DNA from: Selaginella moellendorffii | Taxonomy: Eukaryota > Plantae > Lycopodiophyta | Direction: 5' to 3' | Assembly: GCF_000143415.4 (NCBI RefSeq) | Contig: NW_003314286.1 | Span: 1,239,718-1,303,717, forward strand | DNA: 64,000 nt | In this document: positions 11,004 to 46,231 of the stretch, one piece after another | Position numbering within the stretch: position 1 is the first letter of the stretch | How the letters are laid out: every line of letters starts with the position of its first letter | Notes under the pieces: model-generated | The model's input: only the letters and a program-made list of their open reading frames with translations | Told to the model about the DNA's origin: nothing | The model's database searches: none | Translations under genes and position numbers: made by a program

Positions 11004-12198
11004 CGGGGGGGTTCCAAATGTATAGTAGGGATAGTGGGTAGGTTAGGTATGGCTGACCAACCTGAGGTATAATTTAGCTCCCGTTTGCGTGTCTGTCTTT
11101 ATTTTGCGTCTGGCTTGGGTCTAAACCCAAATTCCATTCCATACTAGCTAGTGGAATACCCATATCCTTGCGTTAGGCCACCGATATGCTGAAATAGTGC
11201 CAAACTCCATTTAACTCTGTTTTGCGTGTTAGTCCTGGCATTGGGATGCTAGATACTCTAGAATTGTTCCAAGTTGCTCTGTGCTCTTGTTCCTTCACTC
11301 TTTGAGTTGTATGCTCGGGAATCATTTCATGCTCTAGTGCCTTCACTCCTTGGCTCTATGCTTAGGAGTTTGGCTTCATTCTTTCGTTCAGTGGCCTAAG
11401 GCTTTGAAACTTGGGTTCCACACCACTATCCTTTGGACATGTGGCATATGGCATGTGACACATGGCACATAGAGGGTTTATGTTCCGCTCCGTGGTTATC
11501 CTATGGTAAATCACCTTAGAATAAAAGGTAAAAACAACATGCACTACATTTGGTATTAGAGGATACGTCTCAACGAGTATTATGCAATGAGATTGGGCAA
11601 CTAGTCTTGTTGCATATGCAGAGAGGAAAACGATGATCTGAGTGGGTACACGTTTAAGTGCAATGACTTTGCAATTGTTCCTTAGGTATAAATTTTGGTT
11701 ATCTTTTTGTACCATATTAAGTGAGCTTGCTCTTAGACTTATAAGATGGATGTGAGATATTCCATTTGCATGAGTTTGCACTTAGGCTTGTGATTGGGCA
11801 CATTAGCAAATCAAGGTTACACTTTGAGTTGGCAAAATTAATGTTAGCCTATCGATAGTTCCATAAGTTGTTCCATATACTATAAGTGAAAATAAACCTC
11901 CCCTGGGTTTGCTATGAGTGGCAATAGGCTAGTCTGTAGCTATTTAGCACGGCACTAGTGGATCCTTCCTAAGCATGATTATAAGTGATCAATCAAGACT
12001 GTAGGGATTAGTTCATTGATTCAAGTAGTCATTGCCATACTCTCTCATAAACTTTTCTTAGATTGGATTGAAGGCAGTGCGAACACAAGCTTAAGATTTA
12101 GTCAAAGATAAGACCGAAAAGAGAGTTAGCAGAGACAAAAGATCAAACACATAAATCATTTTCTCTTCTTGAAGAAATGATTTGCAACGAGGTGTTAA

Positions 12199-13949
12199 TG
12201 TAAGCGACTAAATTTTCCATTCTACTTTAGTCACTTAACCACACCTCCGACCATTTGGAGGAGTCTCATTCACAACCTCCATTAGTCCAATTCAGGACTT
12301 GGGACTTGCTAGCCCCAAGAATGGCATCCATGCCACTCAACACTTGCACCTGGTCCAAGTGCTCCACGTGTCCGGTCCGAAGACCGACACCCAAAGGTAC
12401 CACTGACATCTCGGCCCGTTACGCTAAGGCCATGCCCATTCACCTTTGCTGCACTAGTGGTCCAATACCACTTGCATCACCATCCCGTCTCTCCAAGACT
12501 GGGCCATCTGTTCACGAGTGGTCATCCTAGATCCACTCCTTAGCATCCTTAGGATGCCCACAGACCTGGGGAGTCGCCTTCCCCAAAGTCCCTTTGTCAG
12601 TTCCTACCAAGTCCCTTTCTGCCCCTGGCCGTGTTTACCAACACTGCCACTGGATCGAGGCCCACAGGCCCGACCCCTAAGTCCCACGGTCCTCTGGGAC
12701 TTCCTCACCACATGACTGTGTCCTTGGTCACTACCCCAGAGGACTGCTCCTCTTCCTTTCCACAGTCTGGGCCTTTGGGACAACATTTCGGAACACCGTG
12801 GCCTTACGCGAGCCACCTGGGTACTCTCCCCACCTATCGCCTTTAGGTGCTCTAGCCATGGGCTTAGAGCGAGGTTCCGTTGAGCCACGCCTGGTATCCA
12901 AGTAGGTAGTGCCACCCACACTTGGACTGGGAGCATCGGCCAGTCGATCTCCCGGGGGAACTAGAGCCGGCTCTTGAACACTTCACCAAGCTACCCCGCT
13001 TGTCGGTCCGTATTCACTCTAGTCTTGGACTTCCCAGTGGTCAGTTCATCACCCAACACTGGGTCTGGCCTTCCTGGGCCAAACTGGCCTTTCCTGGCCA
13101 AACTGGCTCCACTGCAGTCCTCCCCCTACTATACTTTTGGAGCTCACCAAACCCCCCAGGGTCTGGGAGACGAACGCTTTGGGCTTTCACCCTCTCAGGC
13201 TCCGGACTCGGACTCGGACTCGGACTCGGATTCGGACTCAGACTCGGTCCCGGGCTCGGTCTCGGCCTCGGCCTCGGTCTCGGTCTCGGTCCCGATCTCG
13301 GTCTCGGTCTCGGTCTCGGTCCCGGTCTCGGTCCCAGTCTCGGACTCCATCTCGGACTCCATCTCGGACTCCATCTCGGACTCCATCTCGGGTCCATCTC
13401 GGACTCCATCTCGGACTCTATTTCGGGTCCATCTCGGGTCCACCTCGGACTCCATCTCGGACTCCATCTCGGACTCCATCTCGGGTCCATCTCGGACTCC
13501 ACTTCGGACTCCAACTCGGGTCCATCTCGGGTCCACCTCGGACTCCATCTCGGACTCCACTTCGGACTCCAACTCGGGTCCATCTCGGGTCCACCTCGGA
13601 CTCCACTTCGGACTCCATCTCGGACTCCATCTCGGGTCCATCTCGGACTCCATTTCGGACTCCAACTTGGGTCCATCTCGGACTCCACTTCGGACTCCAA
13701 CTCGAGTCCATCTCGGACACTCCCACGTGTCATGTGTTGGTCCTTTTGGGTCCCTTTTTGGAGCCTCGCCTTTTGCTCGCTTCGTGCTCATTCCTCGAGC
13801 ACTTTGTTGGGAGTTCCACTCCCGCTCTTGACTTTTCAAGTCGGAGCTTTTGGTCCAAACGTGTTACGCTCGTTTGGCTCTCGCTTTGGCCACTACCACG
13901 TGGCACCCTTCCAGCTCCACTTTGGGGCCTAGGGATTTTGTGTCTCACA
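12199..13949 (-). mobile_element. Solo LTR, family A (1751 bp)
   Basis: TG...CA termini, perfect TSD GTTAA (12194-12198 / 13950-13954), hexamer array at ~13200-13717. Confidence 0.95.
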
Positions 13950-34652: not shown

Positions 34653-36854
34653 CTATATAGATTGAGAGTTTAGATTCGATAACAAAACATATGGCGACGA
34701 CTCTTCCGGATCCAATTCCATCACTCTCTCTTGGATGTGATCTCCACTACCCCGGGCATTCCCATCTCCACTCTGGCACGCCCCCAGCACCGTCGTCCAC
34801 GACACCACGTCCGGCTCAAACGGCATGCTCTGGACGAGGTCCTTGGCGTCCCGAATATACCCCGCCCGGCCCAAAAGATCCACCATGCACCGGTAGTGGT
34901 CTGCCCTGTACGGCAGCCCGAAATCCAACCGCGCCGACCAGAAGTACGTCAGCCCCGTCTTGCACTCGCCCGAGTGGCTGGAGACCGCCAGCATTATGGT
35001 AAATGTCACCTGGTCGGGGGGCACGCCCTCCACGTGCATGGCGTGGAAGACGTGTACGGCCTCGGCGTGGCAGCTGAACTGGGCGTAGGCCGCCAGCATC
35101 GCGTTCCAAGTTATGGTATCTTTCCGTACCATGCTCGAGAAGACGAGCTCCGCGCCGTGGAGGCTACCGCACTTGGCATACATGGTAACCACGGCGTTAC
35201 CGACGGTAACGTCCCAGCTCAGGCTGCTGTCGCCGATGTGGGCGTGGATCACACGGCTGAGAGGCAGCGAGCCTACGGCCGTGCACGCGTCCACCACCCC
35301 CACGAACGTGATCTCGTTAGGCCGGACTCCCTCGACGTCCATTGTACGGTAGAGTTGCAGTGCCTCGTGGCCGCGTGCGTTTTGGGAGTAGCCCGAGATC
35401 ATCGCGTTCCAGGAGACGAGGTTCCGGACGGGCATTCGGTCGAACACGTCGCGGGCCTCGTCAAGTTGCCCCCGTGAGGCAAATGCGGTTACCATGGTCG
35501 TCCAGGAGATCACATCCGGATTGGGGATTCGATCAAAGAGCTTGCTCGCTTCGGTGATAAGTCCTGATTGAGCGAATCCGGAGAGAAGTGCGTTCCACGA
35601 GACTAAGTCGCGGTATGGCGTCCGGTGGAACATTTCCCTGGCCTCCTCCATATGCCCGTGTTGGGTATATCCCGTAATCATGGCGTTCCAAGATACCATA
35701 TTCTTGTCTGGCATCTTTTCAAAGAGCTCCTGGGCTTCTCGGAGATGCCCGTTTTGTGCGTATGCCGAAATCATTGCGTTCCATGAAATAGTGCTTTTCT
35801 TTNNNNNNNNNNNNNNNNNNNNNNNNNNNNNNNNNNNNNNNNNNNNNNNNNNNNNNNNNNNNNNNNNNNNNNNNNNNNNNNNNNNNNNNNNNNNNNNNNN
35901 NNNNNNNNNNNNNNNNNNNNNNNNNGCGAGATCGTTTGCCTGCGCGTACGCGGAGATCATCGTTGTCCACGAGACAATGTCACGGTTGGGCATCTTTTCG
36001 AAGAGCAATTGAGCGCGGTTTACTTGCCGGGTGTGTACGCGAGCCTTGAGCATCGTGTTCCAGGATATGGAATCCCTCTTGGGCATCGCAGCAAAGAGAT
36101 CCATGGCTGTTTGGAACTGGTTGCTCTCGGCGTAAGCCGCCAGCATTGCGTTGCCGCAGTAGAGATCATCGGGGCCATAGCTCTCATGGATGAGCTTTGC
36201 TTCGTGGATTTGGCCCTTTTGAGCGTAGCCCAGCACCATCACCGTGCACGCGATCCCACTCTTCTCTGGCATTCGATCGAAGAGATCTCTCGCTTCCCTG
36301 AGTTTTCCTTCCTTGGCATAGGCAGTGACGATCGTGTTCCAGGAAACTTGATCTAGAACAGGGCTCTCATCAAAGAGCTTCCTGGCTTCTTGGAGATGCC
36401 CGTTTTGGGCATATGCCGAGATCATCGTGTTCCAAGAGATCACATTCTTGTTTTGCAGCAAATCAAAGACCTTTCTCGCTTCGTCAACTTTCTTGTTCTG
36501 TCCATAGACAGCGATCATTGCGTTCCACGTCGCAAGGTTTTTCAAAGGCATCTTCTCAAAGAGCGTCGATGCTTTCTCGAGATGCCCGTTCCGGGAGTAT
36601 GCCAGGAGCATCACATTCCACGAGTAGACGTTCCTCTGCGCGATTCCCTCAAACACATCGACCGCGTCTTTCAAGCTCCCGCACTTTCCGTACATCTCTA
36701 TGAGGAGGTTCTGGAGATAGGTGTTTTGCTGCTCGTGGCTGCCAAGGATCTTTACGTGGAGACGCTTGCCTTCGGCCAAATCTCTGGTTTTGCCACACGA
36801 TTTAAGCAGCGAGGCATAGAAATGCGTATCAATCGTCGCAAGCTCCACCTCCAT
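34653..36854 (-). CDS. PLS-class PPR protein with E domain, no DYW (spans an assembly gap)
   Basis: Tandem 31-aa repeats (MPxRNxVSWNAMI.AYAQNG), then HYRCMVDLLGRAG, MPFEPDVVSW and SPYVLLSN. Confidence 0.93.
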   Translation of the reverse strand: MEVELATIDTHFYASLLKSCGKTRDLAEGKRLHVKILGSHEQQNTYLQNLLIEMYGKCGSLKDAVDVFEGIAQRNVYSWNVMLLAYSRNGHLEKASTLFEKMPLKNLATWNAMIAVYGQNKKVDEARKVFDLLQNKNVISWNTMISAYAQNGHLQEARKLFDESPVLDQVSWNTIVTAYAKEGKLREARDLFDRMPEKSGIACTVMVLGYAQKGQIHEAKLIHESYGPDDLYCGNAMLAAYAESNQFQTAMDLFAAMPKRDSISWNTMLKARVHTRQVNRAQLLFEKMPNRDIVSWTTMISAYAQANDLXXXXXXXXXXXXXXXXXXXXXXXXXXXXXXXXXXXXXXXXXXKKSTISWNAMISAYAQNGHLREAQELFEKMPDKNMVSWNAMITGYTQHGHMEEAREMFHRTPYRDLVSWNALLSGFAQSGLITEASKLFDRIPNPDVISWTTMVTAFASRGQLDEARDVFDRMPVRNLVSWNAMISGYSQNARGHEALQLYRTMDVEGVRPNEITFVGVVDACTAVGSLPLSRVIHAHIGDSSLSWDVTVGNAVVTMYAKCGSLHGAELVFSSMVRKDTITWNAMLAAYAQFSCHAEAVHVFHAMHVEGVPPDQVTFTIMLAVSSHSGECKTGLTYFWSARLDFGLPYRADHYRCMVDLLGRAGYIRDAKDLVQSMPFEPDVVSWTTVLGACQSGDGNARGSGDHIQERVMELDPEESSPYVLLSNLNSQSI
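35803..35925. other. Assembly gap (123 N)
   Basis: Run of n characters. Confidence 0.99.
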
Positions 36855-36868
36855 CGCTGCTGATCAGA

Positions 36869-38743
36869 ATGGAGCTCGCGGAGTGCATCCGCCTCGTTCA
36901 ATCCTGCCACAGCATCGCATCCGCGAGAGAAGTTCACTCCAAAATCGCCCACCACTCCATCCCAACCAGCGCTTTCCTCGCAAACAAGCTCATCGAGATG
37001 TACGGGCGATGCGGCAGCGTTCCAGACGCCCTGGCCGTCTTTGATTCCATGGGCCCGAGAAAAGATGCCTTCACCTGGGTGTTCATGCTGTCGGCATATT
37101 CTCGAAATGGGCATCTCGACGAGGCCCGGAAGCTCTTTTGCGACTGCATGCCGTACCACAGCCTGGTGGGGTGGACGGCCCTGCTGGATGCGTACGGACA
37201 GCAAGCTAGACTGGATGATGCTCGCCACGTGTTCGAATCTATGCCCGAGTGGGACCAGGTGTCCCTCAACGCAGTGCTATCGGCATACACCCGGCATGGG
37301 CATCTAGCATTTGCGGAGATTATATTCTCTGCCATGCCACAGAGGAACCTCGTTTCTTGTAACGCAATCTTAGCAGCGTACGCTCAAAATGGTCAGACCG
37401 TATATGCAAAACAAATATATGATTCAATGCCGGAATGGGATTTGGTGTCGCTGACTACTATCGTTGTAGCATATGCCGTTTCAAGGCATGTAGAGAATTC
37501 GAAGATATGTTTTGACCAAATGCCGCTCAGGAACCTTGTGTCTTGGAATTCGATGCTGAGCTCCTACACTCAAAACGGGCATTCAGCGGAAGCTAAATTG
37601 TTTTTTGATAGCATGCCACAGCATGGTCTAGTGTCACTGAATTTGATGCTTTCCTTGTATGCCCAGAATGGCCTCCACGACGAGGCAAAGTCTCTGTTCT
37701 ACCAAATGCCACAACGTGATGTTGTCTCTTGGAACACGATGATCTCGCTGTACGCAGACCGGGGAGATGTTGGGATAGCCACAAAGCTCTTTGATGAGAT
37801 GCCGTACAGGAATATCGTCTCGTGGAATGCCCTGCTTAGTGCTCACAGCCAAGCTGGGCATGTTGAAGAGGCCAAATGTCTGTTTGATCAGATGCCACAG
37901 AGGGATCTGATCTCGTGGAACTCAATTCTTGTGGCATTTGTCCGGAATGGGCATTTTGAGTATGCAATGAGGACTCTAGAGACCATGCCCGAGCAAAGCC
38001 TTTATGCTTTGACTGCTATGATAAGCACGTATGCCCAAGTCGGGCATATCGAGAGCGCTTGGAAAGTTTTCAGTATCGTTTCTGGAAGAAACACTGTTTT
38101 GTGGACTGCGATGCTTGTCGCTTTTGGAGAAAACGGCTATGTTCAAGAAGCAAAGCTTTTGTTTGATCAGATGGAAGGAAAAGATGCCGTTGTTTGGAAT
38201 TCAATGCTGTCGGCGTATGCCCATAAAGGGCATCACGCTGATGTCTCAAAGCTTCTTAGAACGATGCCTGAGCCAAGTCTAGTGTCTTGGAATGCTGCTC
38301 TCGGTGCATATGCCCGTCACGACCACAACTCTAGCAAGGTTTTCAATTCTTTATACACCATGAACACGATTGAAGCAGTTGACGAGACGTGCTCTAGTTT
38401 GGTGCTCCTGGCTTGCAGCCACAAGGGCGAAGTTTACGTTGCTCGACGATTCTTTATTTCAATGGTGTGGGACTTTGAAGTGGTGCCGACCAAGCAACAC
38501 TACTGCTGCATGGTTGATATTTTGAGTCGCGCCGGTCACTTGGCCGATGCCAAAGAGCTCATCGAGACCATGCCTTTTGTGCCCGATTCTTTCGAGTGGC
38601 GGTGCCTGCTCGCGGCTGGACGATCCCACGATAATCTTGGAGATGGAATTGCAGCAGCAACTAATGTTTTTGGTCTGGATCGCAGTGATGCAACAAGCTA
38701 TGTGTTGTTATCTAATTCTTACTCGATCATCAAGAGCAGTTGA
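36869..38743 (+). CDS. PLS-class PPR protein with E domain, no DYW
   Basis: 624-aa ORF of 31-aa PPR repeats, then HYCCMVDILSRAG, MPFVPD and SYVLLSN. Confidence 0.93.
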   Translation: MELAECIRLVQSCHSIASAREVHSKIAHHSIPTSAFLANKLIEMYGRCGSVPDALAVFDSMGPRKDAFTWVFMLSAYSRNGHLDEARKLFCDCMPYHSLVGWTALLDAYGQQARLDDARHVFESMPEWDQVSLNAVLSAYTRHGHLAFAEIIFSAMPQRNLVSCNAILAAYAQNGQTVYAKQIYDSMPEWDLVSLTTIVVAYAVSRHVENSKICFDQMPLRNLVSWNSMLSSYTQNGHSAEAKLFFDSMPQHGLVSLNLMLSLYAQNGLHDEAKSLFYQMPQRDVVSWNTMISLYADRGDVGIATKLFDEMPYRNIVSWNALLSAHSQAGHVEEAKCLFDQMPQRDLISWNSILVAFVRNGHFEYAMRTLETMPEQSLYALTAMISTYAQVGHIESAWKVFSIVSGRNTVLWTAMLVAFGENGYVQEAKLLFDQMEGKDAVVWNSMLSAYAHKGHHADVSKLLRTMPEPSLVSWNAALGAYARHDHNSSKVFNSLYTMNTIEAVDETCSSLVLLACSHKGEVYVARRFFISMVWDFEVVPTKQHYCCMVDILSRAGHLADAKELIETMPFVPDSFEWRCLLAAGRSHDNLGDGIAAATNVFGLDRSDATSYVLLSNSYSIIKSS

Positions 38744-39792: not shown

Positions 39793-41838
39793 ATGCCCAT
39801 CTCTCCTGCTCAATCTAGCCCATCCAAATGTATTGAGGATTTTTCTTCGTCAATCCGCGAAGCCAACCACCTCATTGAGATGTATGGAAGATCCGGGAGC
39901 GTCGATCGAGCACGGCAAGTGTTTGACGACATCGCGGCTAAGGATCAAGCATCGTGGTCGCTGCTGCTGTTGGCGTATTCCCGGAATGGGTATGTGCGAG
40001 AAGCCAATAGCGTTTTTTATGCCATGCCGGAATGGTGCATGGTATCGCTCAATTCTATGCTGGGATGCTACGTGAAAAATGGGCTGCTGGAGGACGCTGA
40101 GAAGTTCTTTTTTGATTGTATGGCCCTGTGGAGTGTGGTGTCGTGGAACACTGTTATATCTGGCTATGCCCAGTCTGGGGATTGCGAGGATGCGAAGAGG
40201 GTGTTTGATTTGATGCCTTGGAAGAATATGGTGTCGTGGAGCTCGATGCTTGTGGCTTATGCTAATGACAAGAAGCTCAAGGACGCAGAGGAAATATTTT
40301 GTGAAATACCTTTGCTTGACACTGTCGCCTGGACATCTATGCTGGTTGCATATGCCCAAAACGGGGTTTTAAACAAGGCCGAAGAGATTTTTGGCAAAAT
40401 GCCAGAGAGAAACTTGGTGTCCTTTAATGCAATGCTTGCAGCATTTTCACACAGCAATAATGTCTTAAATACGGAGTATTTCTTCAAAGAGATGCCAGAG
40501 AAAAATGTGGTTTCTTGGAATGCCATGCTTGCAGCATATGCCCAAACTGGGCATTTGGAAAACGCTAAGCTCGCGTTTTGCTCTATGTCACAACGTAATC
40601 TCTTCTCTTGGAATTCAATGCTGGCTGCCTACGCCCAGTACGGTCATTTAAAAACCACTAAAGATATGTTTTACTGGAAGATGCCGCAGTGGAACTTGGT
40701 GTCATGGAACACCATGATAAACGCTCACTTGCAAGCCGAGGATTTGGGTGGCGCCAGAGAAATCTTTGCTGCGATGCCGCAGCACGACACCATCGCCTGG
40801 AACTCGATTATGGCAGCGTACGCTCAGCAGGGACTGGTGGAGAACGCAAAGCAGATGTTTGATTCCATGCCTCAATGGAACCAAGTCTCATTCAACGCGA
40901 TGATCTCCGCCTACTCGAATCTACACGAAAGTCATGGCGAAGGATTGGCAGCAGCGAGAAAACTCTTTGATCTCATGCCGCAGCTCTCGCTCGTATCTTG
41001 CAACTCGATGCTATCGCTGCTCTCGGAGAACTCTAAAGTGGAGCGAGCCAAGGAGATGTTCGAGGAGATACCCCAGCGTGACTTGGTTTCCTGGACGGCC
41101 ATGCTCGTTGGGTATGCCCGAGCTGGGCATATCGACGAAGCCAAGAACTTGTTCGATGCAATGCCGCAGTGGGACGTGGTGAGCTTCACGTCGATGCTGC
41201 TGGCATTCTCTCGGAGTGGCCTGGTGGCGGAAGCCAAGCAAATCTTCGACGCCATTCCGCAACACAACTCCGTCTCCTGGGATGCGATGCTGGTTTGCTA
41301 CGCGCAGAGCGGCGATGCTCACTCTTCCAAGCGTCTTTTCGATGCCATGCCGGAGCACGACCTGGTGGCGTGGAATGCGCTCCTCGCGGGGCATGCCCAG
41401 CTCGGGCAGCCCGAGGCTGCGGCGCAAACTTTCGACGAGATAAAAATGGTGGAGCGGCCGGATGCGATCTGCTTCGTGTCGATCATGACCGTTTGCGAGC
41501 TGGAGCAGTGCCGTGAGTGCTTTGTTTCGATGGTTGGAGACTTCGGAGTGGTGGCGAGGAAGCAGCACTACTCGTGTCTTGTGGATGTGCTGGGACGAGC
41601 CGGGCATATCACCAAGGCCATGGATCTCATCACCAACATGCCCTTTGAGGAGGACTGTGTGGATTGGATGTGCTTTCTCGACGCTTGCAGGAGGCACAGC
41701 GATGTGGCCCATGGAGCGCAAGGAGCAAAACGCCTCTTGGAGATTGATCCAGGAAACTCAGCTGCTCTGGTGGTGCTGGGATCCATGTTTACCTTCGGAA
41801 AGGGAGTCAAGGTGGTGGATCAGGTTCTTGGTAAATAA
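39793..41838 (+). CDS. PLS-class PPR protein with E domain, no DYW
   Basis: 681-aa ORF of 31-aa repeats, then HYSCLVDVLGRAG and MPFE. Confidence 0.92.
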   Translation: MPISPAQSSPSKCIEDFSSSIREANHLIEMYGRSGSVDRARQVFDDIAAKDQASWSLLLLAYSRNGYVREANSVFYAMPEWCMVSLNSMLGCYVKNGLLEDAEKFFFDCMALWSVVSWNTVISGYAQSGDCEDAKRVFDLMPWKNMVSWSSMLVAYANDKKLKDAEEIFCEIPLLDTVAWTSMLVAYAQNGVLNKAEEIFGKMPERNLVSFNAMLAAFSHSNNVLNTEYFFKEMPEKNVVSWNAMLAAYAQTGHLENAKLAFCSMSQRNLFSWNSMLAAYAQYGHLKTTKDMFYWKMPQWNLVSWNTMINAHLQAEDLGGAREIFAAMPQHDTIAWNSIMAAYAQQGLVENAKQMFDSMPQWNQVSFNAMISAYSNLHESHGEGLAAARKLFDLMPQLSLVSCNSMLSLLSENSKVERAKEMFEEIPQRDLVSWTAMLVGYARAGHIDEAKNLFDAMPQWDVVSFTSMLLAFSRSGLVAEAKQIFDAIPQHNSVSWDAMLVCYAQSGDAHSSKRLFDAMPEHDLVAWNALLAGHAQLGQPEAAAQTFDEIKMVERPDAICFVSIMTVCELEQCRECFVSMVGDFGVVARKQHYSCLVDVLGRAGHITKAMDLITNMPFEEDCVDWMCFLDACRRHSDVAHGAQGAKRLLEIDPGNSAALVVLGSMFTFGKGVKVVDQVLGK

Positions 41839-41964: not shown

Positions 41965-42295
41965 GAATCTACACGAAAATCATGGCGAAGTATTGGCAGC
42001 AGCAAGAAAACTCTTTAATCTCATGACGCAGGCATTAACGAGCATGGTTGGAAACTCCGTCCACTTTAGAGGTAAGCTTCAAGTTGCAAGAGTCGGGGAG
42101 TGCTCTTGTTTCAATGGCTGGAGATTCCGGAGTGATGGCGAGGAAGCAGCACTAGGGATCTAGCGGGGCACCTCAGCAAGTGGATCTGAGGAGGACCCGC
42201 GGAGTGCACGGAGCAAAGCAGCTCCTGGTCGATCCAGGAGACCGGCTCTGGAAAAGGAGTCAAGCAAGTGGACCAAACGCCGTGCTTGGTAAGCA
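41965..42295 (+). pseudogene. Collapsed duplicate fragments of the adjacent PPR gene
   Basis: 41965-42031 matches 40918-40983. 42097-42295 matches pieces of 41515-41835 with deletions. Confidence 0.8.
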
Positions 42296-42455
42296 AGTCG
42301 TCGTCAATGCTGAAGTCTTCTGACACGACGCGGCGACGCTTATAATACATGAAACTGGGCTACTATAAAAACTTGGCAAATGTTAGAGCCATTCCACAGT
42401 TCAGAGTTCTTACTTGTCTTCGATTACTCGTCACCCAGTGTTCGCAGTAGCATTC

Positions 42456-43046
42456 ATGGCTTATCACCGATCTTCGGCATTCCTTGTGCTCTTCTTGGCT
42501 TGCATGGGTCTGGGATTGTCAGTGGCAGCTGCGACGAGGGAGAGTTTCACGTGCTACTGGACTCCATCTGAGAGTGGTATATGCAGAGGCAAGGCGGCGG
42601 ACACGGCCATCGAGACCTGCGATCCTAAGCAAGAGATAGCTAAGGTGTGTGGCGATTTCTGGAATAAGATTCACACAGAGGGCGCCGGGAAGTTGAAGGA
42701 TGGGCGATACGTGACTTGCCAAGACGGCAATTGCTACTGCTTCGGCGTGACGGATGGTCCCAAGGGCAGCAGAGACAACAACTTGCACCTCTACGTGTCG
42801 ATTGCGGTTCCGGGCGAGAAGTATCCCTTTGGAACGAAGCTCGAGATAAGTCAGCTGAAGGGGCTGGTGCTTCCCGGCGGTGGGCGACACAACGGGTGTG
42901 TTCGGGTGGACGACTCGTGCACAAGCTGTAACATGGACTTCTACGTGGGGCGGAAGAGGAACTACGATGCTATTGACGCGCAGGTCACTGGTGCCTGGGA
43001 TGTTACAAGCGGTTCGAACTGCGAGATTTGGAACTATGGTAATTGA
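42456..43046 (+). CDS. Secreted Cys-rich protein with a 3D (MltA-type, double-psi beta-barrel)-like domain
   Basis: Signal peptide MAYHRSSAFLVLFLACMGLGLSVAAA. SIAV...YPFGTKLEI...HNGCVRVDD...MDFYVG matches the 3D-domain pattern. Intronless, with TATAAAA at 42364-42370. Confidence 0.75.
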   Translation: MAYHRSSAFLVLFLACMGLGLSVAAATRESFTCYWTPSESGICRGKAADTAIETCDPKQEIAKVCGDFWNKIHTEGAGKLKDGRYVTCQDGNCYCFGVTDGPKGSRDNNLHLYVSIAVPGEKYPFGTKLEISQLKGLVLPGGGRHNGCVRVDDSCTSCNMDFYVGRKRNYDAIDAQVTGAWDVTSGSNCEIWNYGN

Positions 43047-43128
43047 GACCCTCCATGTTCTGCTGCACTCTTGAATAGAAGATCGTGATCAAGCCTAATG
43101 GACCTTGCTGCCATGAGTAGCTCCCAAA

Positions 43129-44218
43129 TCATCCCGGACTCTCGAGTAGCTCATCCACAGATAGCTGTAGAATGTTGTGCATGAAACTCGATTTTAGGAA
43201 CTTGGTAGCTTCTCCAGAAGGAAAATGTTCTCCTTGTCATCTCGGCCGACTCGCCAGCTCTCATCCAGGTAGCTTTGGTTTGTCAGGAAAAACTAGCAAG
43301 AGCTGTTGCAAAAGGATACGTGATTTCAAGCCAGCCCGCGGGATTGAAAATGCCTAGCAGGAGGTCGTAGTTCTTCTCAAATAGGTTCATCAACTGCAAG
43401 CAAAAGAATCTAGCACAACTTAGAAACTCTTTGTAACAGTGATGACGGATACCTGGTTTGGAACAATTGTCGATGATTCATACGTGATATCTACGTGCTA
43501 ATCCCTTGAATCCAAAAGACTTAACAATGAAACCAAAGAGAAGAATGCGAGCAAACCGTGGGCGAAGTGATTCGATACGAAGCCGTGATGGTAAGCGAGC
43601 CTCTAAACATTGAAAATGCGGGAACGGTAAACTCGATCGTGTTCACTGCTTTCATCTGCGTTAAGGCAGGCATGTCGAGGAAACAAAAGAGAAACACGAA
43701 AGAAGCCATCGCTAAACCTTCGCTATGTCAATCGTTTGAGTAAAGTCTCCAAGAGAGATGAAGTCTCGAAGCCCGAGTTTAGTACGTTTCGAGCCGAGAA
43801 TGGAGATGGTGCTGTAAAGAAGCTGCCAGTTACCATCCAGCTGCGACAATGAAATCGAAAATCCTTTTAGTGTTGAACAACGAGCATGCGACCTTTGGAA
43901 GATTTTCCATGGGGTTTGGGCATGGATTCAATCTCTCGAGCTCCATGATAAGCTCCTCAATCGCGATTTTCTTTGGGGTCTGGACTCCAAATATCCCCCT
44001 GTTGATACCTACGCGAAAGGAGGCATAGACACATTGTCCTAGAACAGATAGAGCAAGAACAGACCTTTTAAGTTATCCTTGATGGAAGATTTTAGATCTC
44101 GCAGCTCTGGAGCAGTGAGCGCAAGAGATTCCTCCTTGCAGGCCAATCTTGTGCTGATGCTATTGCAGCAGCGGCTTGGCCACGCCCAACAAGCACCGGC
44201 ATTGATCGCTGCCGCCAT
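43129..44218 (-). CDS. FBN5: Plastid-lipid-associated protein / fibrillin-5, 7 exons
   Basis: Manually spliced with GT-AG introns: MAAAINAG...NLK|[22 protein letters not shown]|[36 protein letters not shown]|..|..|[21 protein letters not shown]|[21 protein letters not shown]. Confidence 0.92.
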
Positions 44219-44269
44219 AGAACACTTTAGGGTTTGTCCTCTTCGTGGGCGGGAGGTTTATTCAAATGT

Positions 44270-46231
44270 ATGTCTCGCGAGGAATTGCTACTGATCGTTC
44301 GCTCCTGCCACAGCTTGAATGCCGCCCAGCAGCTCCACGATCGCATCCGCGAGCTGATCAAGTACCCCGATGCCCACTTCTCGAATCACGTCGTGGACAT
44401 GTATGGGCGCTGCGGCAGCGCCCATCTCGCCCAGCAAGCGTTCGATGGCATCGCCTCCAAGAATTCTTCGTCCTGGAACTTCCTCCTTGCCGCATATGCC
44501 CGAAATGGGCATTTGGAAACCGCCAAGCGCCTCTTTGATTCCATCCCGCAAAGAAATCGTTTCACCTGGAGCATCATGCTAGCGGCTTTCACGAAAAGCG
44601 GCCACGTGGCGGAAGCTCAGGATCTCCTTGATAGGGCTCCAGAATGGGATCTAGTCTTCACAACCGAGATGCTCACCGCATATGCCCGAAGCGGGCACCT
44701 TGAAAAAGCCGAAAGAATCTTTCACAGCATGGCCGAGTGGGACCTCGTGTGCTTCGGCGCGATGATAACGGCATATTCGCAGTCCGAACACGTGGCAAGA
44801 GCCGAGAGATTCTTTGACTGGATGCCGGGGTCGAACCTCGTGTGCTGGAACGCCATGCTGGCTACTTATGCCCAAAACGGGCATCTGCTGCGTGCCAAGG
44901 AGCTGTTTGACCGGATGCCACGTCGGAATCTGCTGACGTGGAATTCTATGCTGGCGGCGTGCTCCCAGCACGGCTACGAGCAGGAGGCGAAAGAGGTGTT
45001 CGATCGCATGCCGGAGTGGGATCTGGTGTCGTCTACGTCGATCCTGACGGAATTTGCCAGGATCGGACGGTTGCCGGACGCCATGCGATTGTGGGAGGCG
45101 ATTCCGGAGCAGAATCGCTTTATTTCGACGGCGATGGTGGCCGTGTGCGGAAAGAACGGGTTGTTGGTTGAGGCCAAAGAGATCTTTGATCGGATGCAAG
45201 AGCGTGATATGCCGTCTTGGAATGCGTTGCTCGCTGCGTATACCCAGAATGGTCATCTTGTGCGAGCTAGAGAGGTGTTTGATTTGATGCCGCGGCGAAA
45301 CATGGTCTCGTGGAACACAATGCTGGTGTCATTTGTCCAAACGGGCGACCTCGACTCCGCGGAGACGCTGTTTTATAAGATCCCACAGCAGAATATCGTC
45401 TCTTGTACGGCAATGCTCGTTGGCTTTGCCGAGGGTGGTAACCTCCACAAAGCCGCTAGAGTGTTCCGTGCGATGCCCACACAGGACGTGGTTTCATGCA
45501 CGGCAATTCTTTCTGCATATGCCCAATCTGGGCATCTGGAAGATGCTCATTTTCTTCTCCGTTCAATGCCGGTCCAGAACCTTGTTTCGTGGAACGCAAT
45601 GTTATCTGGCTACGCCAACTTTGGCCATCTTGACGAAGCGTATTCTTTGTTTGTAAGCCTCCCTGAAAAGAATCTAGTTTCCTGGAACTCAATGCTCGCA
45701 GGATATGCCCAAAACGGGCATGCTGAAGCCGCAGTGACGGTGTTTCACGGCATGCCCGAGAGGGACATCGTGTCCTGGAACTCCTACTTGGGCGCGCTCG
45801 CGTTTAACCGGGGTAGCGTTCGCGTCGCGCTCGCCCAGTACGAATCGATGAAGCTCACGGACAATCCCGACGAGGTGTGCTTCGCGATCGTGTTGCTGTG
45901 TTGCAGCCATGCCGGGAAGATCCGGGGCGGGATCCAGCGCTTCCTGGCGATGAGCTTCGATTTCTCGGTGGCCGCGACGAGGAATCACTACTGCTGCCTT
46001 ATCGATCTGTTTGGGCGCACTGGGCATCTCGCCGAGGCCGCGGATTTGATCGCCCATATGCCATTTGAGCCCGATTCTCTGGAATTGCGATGCCTGCTGG
46101 GGGCGTGTAGGACGCATGGGAATCTCGAGCACGGCGCGCGCGTTGCGAGCTTTGTGCTGGGATTGAGAAGGGAAGAATGCGCCTCCTATGTGTTCCTCGC
46201 GAGCATCTACACGCACGCTCTCAAAATTTAG
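44270..46231 (+). CDS. PLS-class PPR protein with E domain, no DYW
   Basis: 31-aa repeats, then HYCCLIDLFGRTG, MPFEPD, LLGACRTHG and SYVFLASIY. First ATG is at 44270. Confidence 0.93.
   Translation: MSREELLLIVRSCHSLNAAQQLHDRIRELIKYPDAHFSNHVVDMYGRCGSAHLAQQAFDGIASKNSSSWNFLLAAYARNGHLETAKRLFDSIPQRNRFTWSIMLAAFTKSGHVAEAQDLLDRAPEWDLVFTTEMLTAYARSGHLEKAERIFHSMAEWDLVCFGAMITAYSQSEHVARAERFFDWMPGSNLVCWNAMLATYAQNGHLLRAKELFDRMPRRNLLTWNSMLAACSQHGYEQEAKEVFDRMPEWDLVSSTSILTEFARIGRLPDAMRLWEAIPEQNRFISTAMVAVCGKNGLLVEAKEIFDRMQERDMPSWNALLAAYTQNGHLVRAREVFDLMPRRNMVSWNTMLVSFVQTGDLDSAETLFYKIPQQNIVSCTAMLVGFAEGGNLHKAARVFRAMPTQDVVSCTAILSAYAQSGHLEDAHFLLRSMPVQNLVSWNAMLSGYANFGHLDEAYSLFVSLPEKNLVSWNSMLAGYAQNGHAEAAVTVFHGMPERDIVSWNSYLGALAFNRGSVRVALAQYESMKLTDNPDEVCFAIVLLCCSHAGKIRGGIQRFLAMSFDFSVAATRNHYCCLIDLFGRTGHLAEAADLIAHMPFEPDSLELRCLLGACRTHGNLEHGARVASFVLGLRREECASYVFLASIYTHALKI

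What the first reader, a model, noticed from the sequence alone, without database searches (positions are those of the whole stretch)
42456..43046. Intronless secreted 3D/MltA-like protein in a land-plant gene island: candidate horizontally acquired cell-wall-active enzyme
Seen: a 196-aa ORF with a clear signal peptide, 11 Cys in the mature part, its own TATA box and no introns. It carries TCYW...EGAGKL.DG...SIAV...PFGTKLEI..L.G..LP.G..HNGCVRVDD...MDFYVG. Knowledge: this follows the 3D (three-Asp) domain of MltA-type lytic transglycosylases, a mainly bacterial family that I also recall from some fungi but not from typical seed-plant genomes. The second Asp (VDD) and the Asp equivalent to the MltA catalytic residue (MDFY) appear kept, while the first (IAVD) is replaced by Pro. 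Inference: a microbe-derived gene domesticated as an apoplastic peptidoglycan/glycan-cleaving defence protein or a loosenin-like protein. It sits between a PPR gene and FBN5, so contamination is unlikely.
Basis: partly seen in the sequence, partly recalled or inferred. Interest (0 to 1): 0.85.

Follow-up and report, generated by a model that had tools for sequence, protein, structure and literature searches.

The report
Fungal-type MltA-like enzyme gene in Selaginella
A spikemoss (Selaginella) carries an expressed, intronless gene for a small secreted protein with the fold and active-site residues of bacterial cell-wall-cutting MltA enzymes; its nearest relatives are in early-diverging fungi, so it was most likely gained by an old horizontal transfer.

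Summary
In detail: 42456..43046 (+) is an intact, intronless 196-aa ORF with a signal peptide, 11 mature-part Cys and a TATA box. It is transcribed in four independent transcriptome studies. The window is syntenic (97-98% identical) with S. moellendorffii SELMODRAFT_405120 on a 4.3-Mb scaffold, so contamination is excluded. The protein itself hits no Pfam, NCBIfam or PDB sequence. However, 20 of 62 aligned homologues hit PF06725 (3D), and a confident model (pLDDT 91) matches MltA best (Z 11, about 160 residues), well above expansin, kiwellin and barwin (Z 7.5 or less). Profile alignment maps D161 to the MltA catalytic Asp308, D153 to Asp297, T32/Y34 to Thr99/Tyr101, and Pro119 to Asp261. Named relatives are Zoopagomycota and Mucoromycota fungi. 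The deeper relatives are Myxococcota. No other plant appears except one unresolved Diphasiastrum scaffold. The tree nests Selaginella among Entomophthoromycotina with moderate support, but AU tests do not reject the alternatives. Enzyme activity and a defence role are inferred, not shown. The scan had already reached this reading on another piece of the same genome (s1-380557). I found no paper describing it in the library.

The parts
42364..42371 (+). TATA box (TATAAAAA)
   Evidence: Sequence. Transcript contigs begin about 35-45 nt downstream at 42406 and 42416. Contigs cannot fix an exact start.
42406..43252 (+). Transcribed region as covered by the longest colinear transcript contig (X1 record 4, 838 nt)
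   Evidence: The runs are shown to be RNA because they skip six GT..AG introns of the neighbouring fibrillin gene. There is no joint inside the ORF.
42456..43046 (+). CDS of the 196-aa secreted MltA-like protein (stop included)
   Evidence: 94% identical to SELMODRAFT_405120.
42456..42533 (+). Predicted signal peptide (residues 1-26, cleavage near AAA/TRE)
   Evidence: Hydrophobic core. Low pLDDT with a helix at 8-17. Structural and sequence homology begin at residues 19-30.
42546..42566 (+). First barrel strand FTCYWTP with Thr32-x-Tyr34, equivalent to E. coli MltA FTGYYTP (Thr99/Tyr101 mature, T119/Y121 precursor)
   Evidence: T is found in 123 and Y in 141 of 152 family rows. Listed as substrate or catalytic-site residues in PMC8562663 and PMC6667503.
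42561..42785 (+). Cys-rich insert (residues 36-110) at the topological position of MltA domain 2; contains EGAG (residues 75-78, nt 42678-42689) matching MltA QGSG
   Evidence: 158-163 residues align to MltA, more than its barrel domain can supply within the aligned range (inference). Motif comparison, with Q182/S184 from PMC8562663.
42606..42626 (+). Allelic hypervariable loop (residues 51-57: 5 of the 11 differences from P0001)
   Evidence: Variant cluster 42607-42624 seen in runs X1 and X6 but not X2 or X5.
42759..42950 (+). 3D-domain core (residues 102-165) aligned to E. coli MltA residues 264-332 (precursor numbering)
   Evidence: hhalign probability 84%, E 7.8e-6. hmmsearch of the family profile against MltA.
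42810..42812 (+). Pro119 at the position of MltA Asp261 (first of the three Asp)
   Evidence: This family column holds N in 67 rows, D in 65 and P in 5; P occurs only in the Selaginella clade.
42912..42914 (+). Asp153, equivalent to MltA Asp297 (D317 precursor)
   Evidence: Present in 151 of 152 family rows.
42936..42938 (+). Asp161, equivalent to the MltA catalytic Asp308 (D328 precursor)
   Evidence: Present in 142 of 152 family rows. Asp308 is the single general acid/base catalyst per PMC8562663.
39793..41838 (+). Upstream neighbour: intronless PPR gene (681 aa)
   Evidence: Pfam PPR E 3.8e-105. Same order as in L003.
43185..44209 (-). Downstream convergent neighbour: fibrillin (PAP_fibrillin) gene with six small introns; coordinates by synteny with L003
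   Evidence: spliced joints at 43272-43320, 43393-43453, 43497-43557, 43655-43718, 43840-43893 and 44006-44063.

Best explanation
The ORF is a genuine, transcribed nuclear gene of Selaginella moellendorffii, allelic or syntenic with SELMODRAFT_405120. It encodes a secreted, disulfide-rich, compact MltA-type protein of lytic transglycosylase family 2 (3D domain). The protein is a double-psi beta-barrel carrying a reduced insert domain, which together should form a glycan-binding groove. It keeps the MltA active-site set: Thr32/Tyr34, an E-G-A-G motif, Asp153 and the catalytic Asp161. The most likely mechanism (inferred, not shown) is as follows. After ER-dependent secretion to the apoplast, the protein binds beta-1,4-linked GlcNAc/MurNAc-type glycan strands and cleaves them with Asp161 as the single acid/base catalyst. 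The substrate would be bacterial peptidoglycan, or possibly chitin or chitosan. The role would be antimicrobial or elicitor-releasing defence. The gene belongs to a subfamily rooted in predatory Myxococcota and expanded in Zoopagomycota and Mucoromycota fungi. The plant copies most likely derive from an old fungus-to-lycophyte horizontal transfer, followed by duplication and birth-and-death turnover.
For: Gene reality: intact ORF; transcript contigs in four runs from four studies, which are shown to be RNA by the spliced fibrillin introns; long-term dN/dS of 0.27-0.33 between paralogue groups. Host integration: same gene order and 97-98% identity over 20 kb with a 4.3-Mb S. moellendorffii scaffold; PPR genes on the flanks; GC3 of 0.67, equal to the neighbours. 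Family: 278 homologues in the exhaustive search; PF06725 in 20 of 62; the profile hits YuiC; model pLDDT 91.2; the top 14 Foldseek hits are all MltA; VIA Z 11.1 and 11.0 with 158-163 residues aligned, against 7.8 or less for generic DPBB proteins; Atlas TM 0.80 over 174 residues to a Myxococcota PF06725 cluster. Active site: hhalign maps D161 to D308, D153 to D297 and P119 to D261; FTCYWTP corresponds to FTGYYTP; conservation of D153 in 151/152, D161 in 142/152 and Y34 in 141/152 rows; residue roles come from PMC8562663 and PMC6667503. Origin: the nearest named relatives are Entomophthora, Conidiobolus, Neoconidiobolus, Tieghemiomyces, Dimargaris, Mucor and others. In the careful tree the Selaginella clade (100/99) is sister to a Conidiobolus protein (85/79) inside an Entomophthoromycotina group (69/85), rooted on bacteria identified by gene context. 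The bacterial reservoir is Myxococcota.
Against: The protein itself gives no hit in Pfam, NCBIfam or PDB sequences even at E up to 10, so family assignment is transitive and structural. No enzymatic data exist for any eukaryotic member. The first Asp is Pro, although that position is variable across the family. The AU tests do not reject plants lying outside all fungal, animal and viral rows (p 0.117) or lycophyte monophyly (p 0.33). The Conidiobolus sister is a long branch, so long-branch attraction is possible. Only part of the 278 hits could be given a taxon name. Recent allelic and paralogue pairs have dN/dS of about 1, which could reflect relaxed constraint rather than an arms race. Expansins also keep the equivalent Asp without known lytic activity (PMC4755413).
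Confidence: 0.7

Rival explanations
1. Same fold and origin, but not an enzyme. It would be a non-lytic, expansin- or loosenin-like wall-loosening protein, a glycan-binding protein, or a kiwellin-like decoy or inhibitor acting in the apoplast.
For: DPBB relatives such as expansins, loosenins, kiwellins and a papain inhibitor are structurally detectable (Z 6.5-7.5). Expansins keep the equivalent Asp with no demonstrated lytic activity (PMC4755413). The paralogues sit beside kiwellin-ectodomain receptor kinases. The Diphasiastrum relative has lost the catalytic Asp. Recent dN/dS is about 1.
Against: The full MltA active-site set (Thr, Tyr, E/Q-G-x-G and two Asp) is kept in all intact Selaginella copies and is nearly invariant across 152 family rows. 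The MltA match covers about twice as many residues as any non-lytic DPBB protein.
Confidence: 0.22
2. Vertical inheritance: an ancient eukaryotic gene retained only in lycophytes among plants and lost everywhere else.
For: The AU test does not reject plants lying outside all non-plant eukaryotic rows (p 0.117), and lycophyte monophyly is not rejected (p 0.33). Codon composition is fully host-like.
Against: No other plant or alga appears among the named hits of searches over 15 billion proteins. The ML tree nests both lycophyte lineages inside Entomophthoromycotina. This scenario requires very many independent losses. Even within fungi the family is confined to a few phyla, and it also occurs in springtails and a giant-virus-like contig, which is a pattern typical of transfer.
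Confidence: 0.08
3. Direct transfer from bacteria (Myxococcota-like) to the lycophyte, independent of the fungal copies.
For: The bacterial clade shares nearly the same motifs and compact fold. Soil Myxococcota live alongside plants.
Against: The best bacterial-clade hits are weaker (E 1e-11 or worse) than the fungal ones (1e-28 to 1e-19). In the rooted tree the bacterial rows form a separate clade (100/99) and Selaginella sits among the fungal rows.
Confidence: 0.06
4. Assembly contamination, or a microbial gene not really in the plant genome.
For: None beyond the microbial affinity of the protein.
Against: The gene is embedded between plant PPR, F-box, kinase, fibrillin and HEATR1 genes in two independent haplotypes or assemblies. 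It is found in runs from 10 studies. Transcript contigs run on into the neighbouring fibrillin exons. GC3 matches the neighbours.
Confidence: 0.01
5. A plastid peptidoglycan-remodelling enzyme, since non-seed plants keep a plastid murein pathway (my own knowledge).
For: It is an MltA-type fold in a lineage said to retain Mur genes. This was not tested here.
Against: The N-terminus is a classical ER signal peptide rather than a Ser/Thr-rich transit peptide. The 11 Cys suggest folding in the oxidising secretory pathway. The gene is absent from mosses and ferns, which share that pathway.
Confidence: 0.03

Closest known systems
MltA (membrane-bound lytic murein transglycosylase A; LT family 2; PDB 2ae0, 2pi8, 2pnw, 7esj; LtgG 6qk4)
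   Same: It is the best structural match (Foldseek E 6e-6, VIA Z 11, 158-163 aligned residues). It shares the DPBB barrel with an insert at the same topological position. The catalytic Asp308, Asp297, Thr99/Tyr101 and the QGSG-like motif have equivalents.
   Different: About half the size (roughly 170 mature residues against about 340). The insert is about 75 residues and Cys-rich, instead of the roughly 130-residue domain 2, and no family member hits PF03562. There is no lipoprotein anchor, only a eukaryotic signal peptide. Asp261 is Pro. An invariant His-Asn/Asp-Gly-Cys motif precedes Asp2, and E. coli MltA lacks it. Sequence identity is only 13-18%.
Sps/YuiC-type 3D-domain proteins of Firmicutes (PDB 4wjt, 4wli, 4wlk) and Pfam PF06725
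   Same: Shares the 3D core. The family profile hits YuiC at E 0.006, VIA gives Z 8.5, and 20 of 62 homologues hit PF06725.
   Different: YuiC is the bare barrel, with only 93 residues aligned. This protein has the extra insert and an N-terminal Thr-x-Tyr strand like MltA. It does not itself reach the PF06725 model.
Uncharacterised '3D domain-containing proteins' of Zoopagomycota/Mucoromycota fungi and Myxococcota
   Same: True full-length homologues: 33-42% identity with E down to 6e-28, Atlas TM 0.78-0.80 over 170-174 residues, and the same motif and Cys framework.
   Different: The host is a vascular plant. Asp1 is Pro only in the Selaginella clade, and the window copy has an extra Cys33. 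No member has a tested function, and I found no paper on them.
Plant DPBB proteins: expansins, kiwellin, barwin/PR-4, EG45-like; fungal loosenins and cerato-platanins
   Same: Shares the DPBB core fold, secretion, a Cys-rich mature part, and cell-wall or defence contexts.
   Different: Much weaker matches: Z 5.3-7.5 with about 80-87 residues, and Foldseek E above 0.09. No Pfam hit to their families. They lack the MltA-type insert and the Thr-x-Tyr strand.

Membership tests
Pfam PF06725 (3D domain) | The protein itself matches the PF06725 profile | tested here: not met
   No Pfam family at E up to 10. The closest fungal homologue, P0005, reaches only E 0.0036 and 17.9 bits against a cut-off of 23.8.
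Pfam PF06725 (3D domain) | Transitive homology: significant full-length homologues match PF06725 | tested here: met
   20 of 62 aligned homologues match, best E 1.7e-15. Bacterial relatives P0079 and P0047 carry PF06725.
MltA / lytic transglycosylase family 2 | Double-psi beta-barrel catalytic domain with MltA as the best structural match | tested here: met
   Model pLDDT 91.2. The top 14 Foldseek hits are MltA. VIA gives Z 11.1 and 11.0.
MltA / lytic transglycosylase family 2 | Catalytic Asp (E. coli Asp308) | tested here: met
   D161 aligns to D328 precursor, which is D308 mature. Conserved in 142 of 152 rows.
MltA / lytic transglycosylase family 2 | Second conserved Asp (Asp297) and the substrate-site Thr99/Tyr101 | tested here: met
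   D153 aligns to D317 precursor. FTCYWTP corresponds to FTGYYTP (that segment of the alignment is weak, but it is the only T-x-Y in MltA and lies where the structural alignment predicts). The residue list comes from PMC8562663.
MltA / lytic transglycosylase family 2 | First of the three Asp (Asp261) | tested here: not met
   Pro119 occupies this position. The column is N or D in the rest of the family.
MltA / lytic transglycosylase family 2 | MltA-specific insert domain 2 (PF03562, about 130 residues) forming the groove | tested here: inconclusive
   No member hits PF03562. A 75-residue insert with an EGAG motif matching QGSG sits at the same position, and the number of aligned residues implies partial overlap with domain 2. 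I had no access to model coordinates to verify this.
MltA / lytic transglycosylase family 2 | Formation of 1,6-anhydroMurNAc products from peptidoglycan | not testable with these tools
   Requires biochemistry.
Expansin / kiwellin / barwin (plant DPBB families) | Profile match, or best structural match, to these families | tested here: not met
   No Pfam hit. Z 5.3-7.5 with about 82-86 residues, against 11 with about 160 for MltA. Foldseek E is 0.095 or worse.
Horizontally acquired gene (fungus to plant) | Patchy distribution: absent from other plants, abundant in the donor group | tested here: met
   Named hits are Selaginella, one Diphasiastrum scaffold, Zoopagomycota and Mucoromycota fungi, a springtail and bacteria. 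Only part of the 278 hits could be named.
Horizontally acquired gene (fungus to plant) | Recipient sequences nested within the donor clade with statistical support | tested here: inconclusive
   The ML tree nests them (85/79 and 69/85 for Selaginella; 97/82 and 96/87 for Diphasiastrum). The AU test for plants outside gives p 0.117.
Horizontally acquired gene (fungus to plant) | Physical integration among native genes | tested here: met
   Synteny across two haplotypes or assemblies, PPR, fibrillin and F-box neighbours, and transcripts.

The most novel reading that the evidence does not exclude
Lycophytes acquired a working lytic transglycosylase from an Entomophthoromycotina-like fungus, possibly once, before Selaginellales and Lycopodiales split. 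It now acts as an apoplastic immune enzyme whose glycan fragments (muropeptides or chitin oligomers) are sensed by the neighbouring receptor kinases with kiwellin-like DPBB ectodomains. That would make the locus an enzyme-plus-sensor module built from two DPBB families, and the first plant lytic transglycosylase.
Probability: 0.1. Interest if true: 0.85.

Novelty: new variant of a known kind. Interest (0 to 1): 0.6.

Why it matters
MltA-type lytic transglycosylases are regarded as bacterial and phage enzymes for peptidoglycan turnover. An expressed, constrained, secreted copy with an intact active site in a vascular plant would extend this enzyme class to plants. It would also add a well-anchored case to the short list of fungus-to-plant gene transfers. 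The work also exposes an uncharacterised compact subfamily shared by predatory Myxococcota, insect- and fungus-parasitic Zoopagomycota, Mucoromycota, springtails and a giant-virus-like contig, whose substrate (peptidoglycan or chitin) is unknown. The protein is small and its catalytic residue is predicted, so the hypothesis can be tested directly by recombinant assays.

Tried and rejected
- Direct Pfam, NCBIfam and PDB-sequence searches of the protein gave nothing.
- Folding with the 4-sequence Selaginella alignment gave an unusable model (pLDDT 42). Only the 62-sequence alignment worked.
- The A2 alignment was too diverse for the search for related loci. A tighter bacterial alignment, A3, was used instead.
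- A word-indexed search from the Diphasiastrum protein found no further plant relatives.
- P0168, which looked like a KWL1 plus MltA-like fusion protein, is a chimeric gene model over degraded copies, so I reject it as a real fusion.
- The apparent 15-kb intron-rich Diphasiastrum gene is a single-exon domain with a doubtful 32-aa tail. Whether that TE-rich scaffold is plant or fungal could not be settled.
- AU tests of lycophyte monophyly and of plants lying outside the fungi were both non-rejecting.
- Literature searches found no description of eukaryotic MltA/3D proteins or of this transfer.
- Richards et al. 2009 (Plant Cell), which lists fungus-to-lycophyte transfers, is not held in the library. 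From memory it does not include this family, but I could not verify that.

Full report
**1.
The + strand carries an ATG at 42456 and a TGA ending at 43046, giving a 196-aa product. Residues 1-26 form a typical signal peptide, with Arg5, a hydrophobic core at 9-19 and SVAAA/TRE. Cys16 lies in the signal peptide, and 11 further Cys lie in the mature part. TATAAAAA sits at 42364-42371.

**2. The gene is real, host-integrated and expressed.**
- The best database match (94% identity) is S. moellendorffii SELMODRAFT_405120.
- Its locus on the 4.34-Mb scaffold GL377568.1 has the same gene order as the window: two long ORFs, an F-box gene, a 681-aa ORF, this gene, a PAP_fibrillin gene, another long ORF and HEATR1.
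- The two loci are 97-98% identical over 20 kb, so they are alleles or haplotypes.
- The long flanking ORFs in the window are PPR genes (Pfam E down to 1e-120).
- GC3 of the gene (0.67) equals that of its neighbours (0.55-0.68). Contamination is therefore excluded and any transfer is old.
- Sequencing runs from 10 studies hold the stretch.
- In four runs from four studies, contigs skip six 47-62-nt segments of the neighbouring minus-strand fibrillin gene. The skipped ends are CT..AC, which is GT..AG on that strand, so these runs are transcriptomes.
- The same runs carry contigs colinear with this gene (for example 838 nt over 42406-43252) with no joint inside the ORF. The gene is thus transcribed and intronless.
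- A variant cluster at 42607-42624 is seen in two of the four runs. It corresponds to the P0001 allele, so both alleles are expressed.

**3. What it is.**
- The protein alone matches nothing in Pfam, NCBIfam or PDB sequences, even at E up to 10.
- An exhaustive phmmer scan of 1.84 billion representatives finds 278 homologues at E 1e-3 or better, and 45 at 1e-10 or better. Most are full-length matches at 33-42% identity.
- Of 62 aligned members, 20 match PF06725 (3D domain), best E 1.7e-15. The family profile also finds B. subtilis YuiC.
- With this alignment AlphaFold gives a confident model (pLDDT 91.2, pTM 0.82).
- Foldseek's top 14 PDB hits are all MltA-type lytic transglycosylases (E 6e-6 to 3e-3). 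Barwin, cerato-platanin, expansin, loosenin and kiwellin follow at E 0.095 or worse.
- An independent aligner gives MltA Z 11.1 and 11.0 with 158-163 residues aligned, YuiC Z 8.5 with 93 residues, and expansins and kiwellin Z 7.5 or less with about 83 residues.
- MltA's barrel domain can supply only about 120 residues within the aligned range. The match must therefore also include part of MltA's inserted domain 2. This is an inference, since I had no access to the coordinates.
- The ESM Atlas search finds full-length matches to a Mucoromycota cluster (TM 0.78) and to a Myxococcota PF06725 cluster (TM 0.80, 174 residues, 2.3 A).

**4. The active site.**
- hhalign of the family against E. coli MltA, taken from NC_000913, gives E 7.8e-6. 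It aligns Pro119 to Asp261, Asp153 to Asp297 and Asp161 to Asp308 in mature numbering.
- Asp308 is the single general acid/base catalyst of MltA (PMC8562663). The equivalent D343A mutation abolishes LtgG activity (PMC6667503).
- E. coli MltA has a single T-x-Y motif, FTGYYTP. The family profile aligns it to FTCYWTP, at the place the structural alignment predicts.
- The insert carries EGAG where MltA has QGSG (Q182/S184).
- So five of the seven substrate-binding residues listed in PMC8562663 have identical or conservative equivalents.
- Across 152 family rows, D153 is kept in 151, D161 in 142, Y34 in 141, T32 in 123, H145 in 151 and G147 in all 152. The Asp1 column is N or D, and is Pro only in Selaginella.
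- All intact Selaginella copies keep the full set.

**5. Origin.**
- Named nearest relatives are Entomophthora, Conidiobolus, Neoconidiobolus, Tieghemiomyces, Dimargaris, Dispira and Piptocephalis (Zoopagomycota), and Mucor, Spinellus and Bifiguratus (Mucoromycota).
- Deeper clades are bacterial by gene context. A genome scan shows 268 loci, almost all in Myxococcota, mainly Kofleriaceae, Haliangiales and Polyangia. They carry nearly the same motifs and Cys framework.
- In a careful ML tree (58 rows, 180 columns, LG+C20 PMSF) rooted on the bacteria, the Selaginella clade (100/99) is sister to a Conidiobolus protein (85/79) within an Entomophthoromycotina group (69/85).
- The only other plant entry is a Diphasiastrum complanatum protein on an unplaced 65-kb scaffold. 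It nests in a starred Entomophthoromycotina subclade.
- AU tests do not reject lycophyte monophyly (p 0.33). They also do not reject placing the plants outside all non-plant eukaryotic rows (p 0.117, delta lnL 19).
- The HGT inference therefore rests mainly on the patchy distribution together with a favourable but not decisive topology. I put fungus-to-lycophyte transfer at about 0.75.

**6. Family dynamics in Selaginella.**
- There are three intact types (405120/window, 416208, 431484) and several decayed copies. These include P0004 with an internal deletion, fragments in L006, and the chimeric model P0168.
- dN/dS is 0.27-0.33 between the two paralogue groups.
- It is 0.92 between the alleles (13 nonsynonymous and 4 synonymous changes) and 1.1 between 416208 and 431484.
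- Both recent values exceed the long-term rate (binomial p 0.033 and 4e-5), and neither differs from 1.
- Five of the 11 allelic amino-acid differences cluster at residues 51-57 of the insert.
- This pattern fits a defence-type birth-and-death family, but it equally fits recently relaxed constraint.

**7. Mechanism and its status.**
Shown:
- an expressed gene under long-term constraint;
- a secretory-type N-terminus;
- an MltA-like fold;
- conserved catalytic and substrate residues.

Inferred:
- secretion to the apoplast;
- cleavage of GlcNAc/MurNAc-type glycans by Asp161;
- a defence role.

The ancestral setting in predatory Myxococcota favours peptidoglycan as substrate. The enrichment in insect- and fungus-parasitic fungi and in fungivorous springtails leaves chitin or chitosan open.

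**8. Comparison and novelty.**
It works like MltA. For membership, the fold, the catalytic Asp, Asp297 and Thr/Tyr are met. The first Asp and a direct Pfam match are not met. Domain 2 is reduced, so that feature is inconclusive. It is not an expansin, kiwellin or barwin.

I found no paper in the library on eukaryotic MltA/3D proteins or on this transfer. I re-derived it independently here.

I rate it a new variant of a known kind, with interest 0.6.

Noticed in passing
L004:3421-7534, L005:5107-13701, L006:5822-7741: The Selaginella paralogues of this gene lie directly beside receptor-like kinases whose ectodomain is a kiwellin-like DPBB domain (PF24300 KWL1 + Pkinase). This could be a defence gene cluster linking two DPBB families. 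The loci may not be independent, because they could be duplicates or haplotypes of one another.
   Followed up: partly
L006:8001-12481 (P0168) and P0004: SELMODRAFT_413345 (516 aa) is a chimeric gene model. It joins a KWL1 domain, remnants of one MltA-like copy and a second copy that lacks its first strand. Frame-shifted fragments follow at 11801-12481. SELMODRAFT_423500 (132 aa) has an internal deletion.
   Followed up: yes
L002:10001-10588 and L002:7007-7415: The Diphasiastrum complanatum homologue (O6H91_Y164800) is single-exon for the whole domain. It has lost the catalytic Asp (VQWYVG) and has a degraded second copy 3 kb upstream. The unplaced scaffold is TE-rich (gypsy and copia fragments) with 38% GC, and I could not decide between plant and fungal-contaminant origin.
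   Followed up: partly
L010:10001-11305: The springtail Allacma fusca has homologues (P0017, P0166). P0017 has introns and sits on a 99-kb contig among animal genes (MIF4G/MA3, OCIA), which suggests a separate transfer into Collembola.
   Followed up: partly
L009:8001-8786: A family member (P0032) lies on a 27-kb contig that looks like a giant virus. It has dense ORFs without Pfam hits, an intein-containing DUF5906 primase-helicase, a P9_TM hit, glycosyltransferases and dNK.
   Followed up: no
L011-L090: The compact Cys-containing 3D proteins with the HDGC..ADD motif are almost entirely from predatory Myxococcota (Kofleriaceae, Haliangiales, Polyangia): 268 loci among species-representative prokaryote genomes.
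   Followed up: partly
window:43150-43320: Transcript contigs of the MltA-like gene continue into the last exons of the convergent fibrillin gene (joint 43272-43320 in the same contig). The 3' ends of the two genes therefore overlap or abut. A 9-13-nt indel polymorphism lies at 43154-43156.
   Followed up: no
window:34653-46231: A cluster of four long intronless PPR genes (34653-36854 on the minus strand; 36869-38743, 39793-41838 and 44234-46231 on the plus strand) surrounds the gene. A short PPR-like remnant ORF lies at 41993-42163.
   Followed up: partly
window:42606-42626: Five of the 11 amino-acid differences between the window allele and SELMODRAFT_405120 fall within residues 51-57. Allelic dN/dS is 0.92, against 0.27-0.33 between paralogue groups.
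   Followed up: partly
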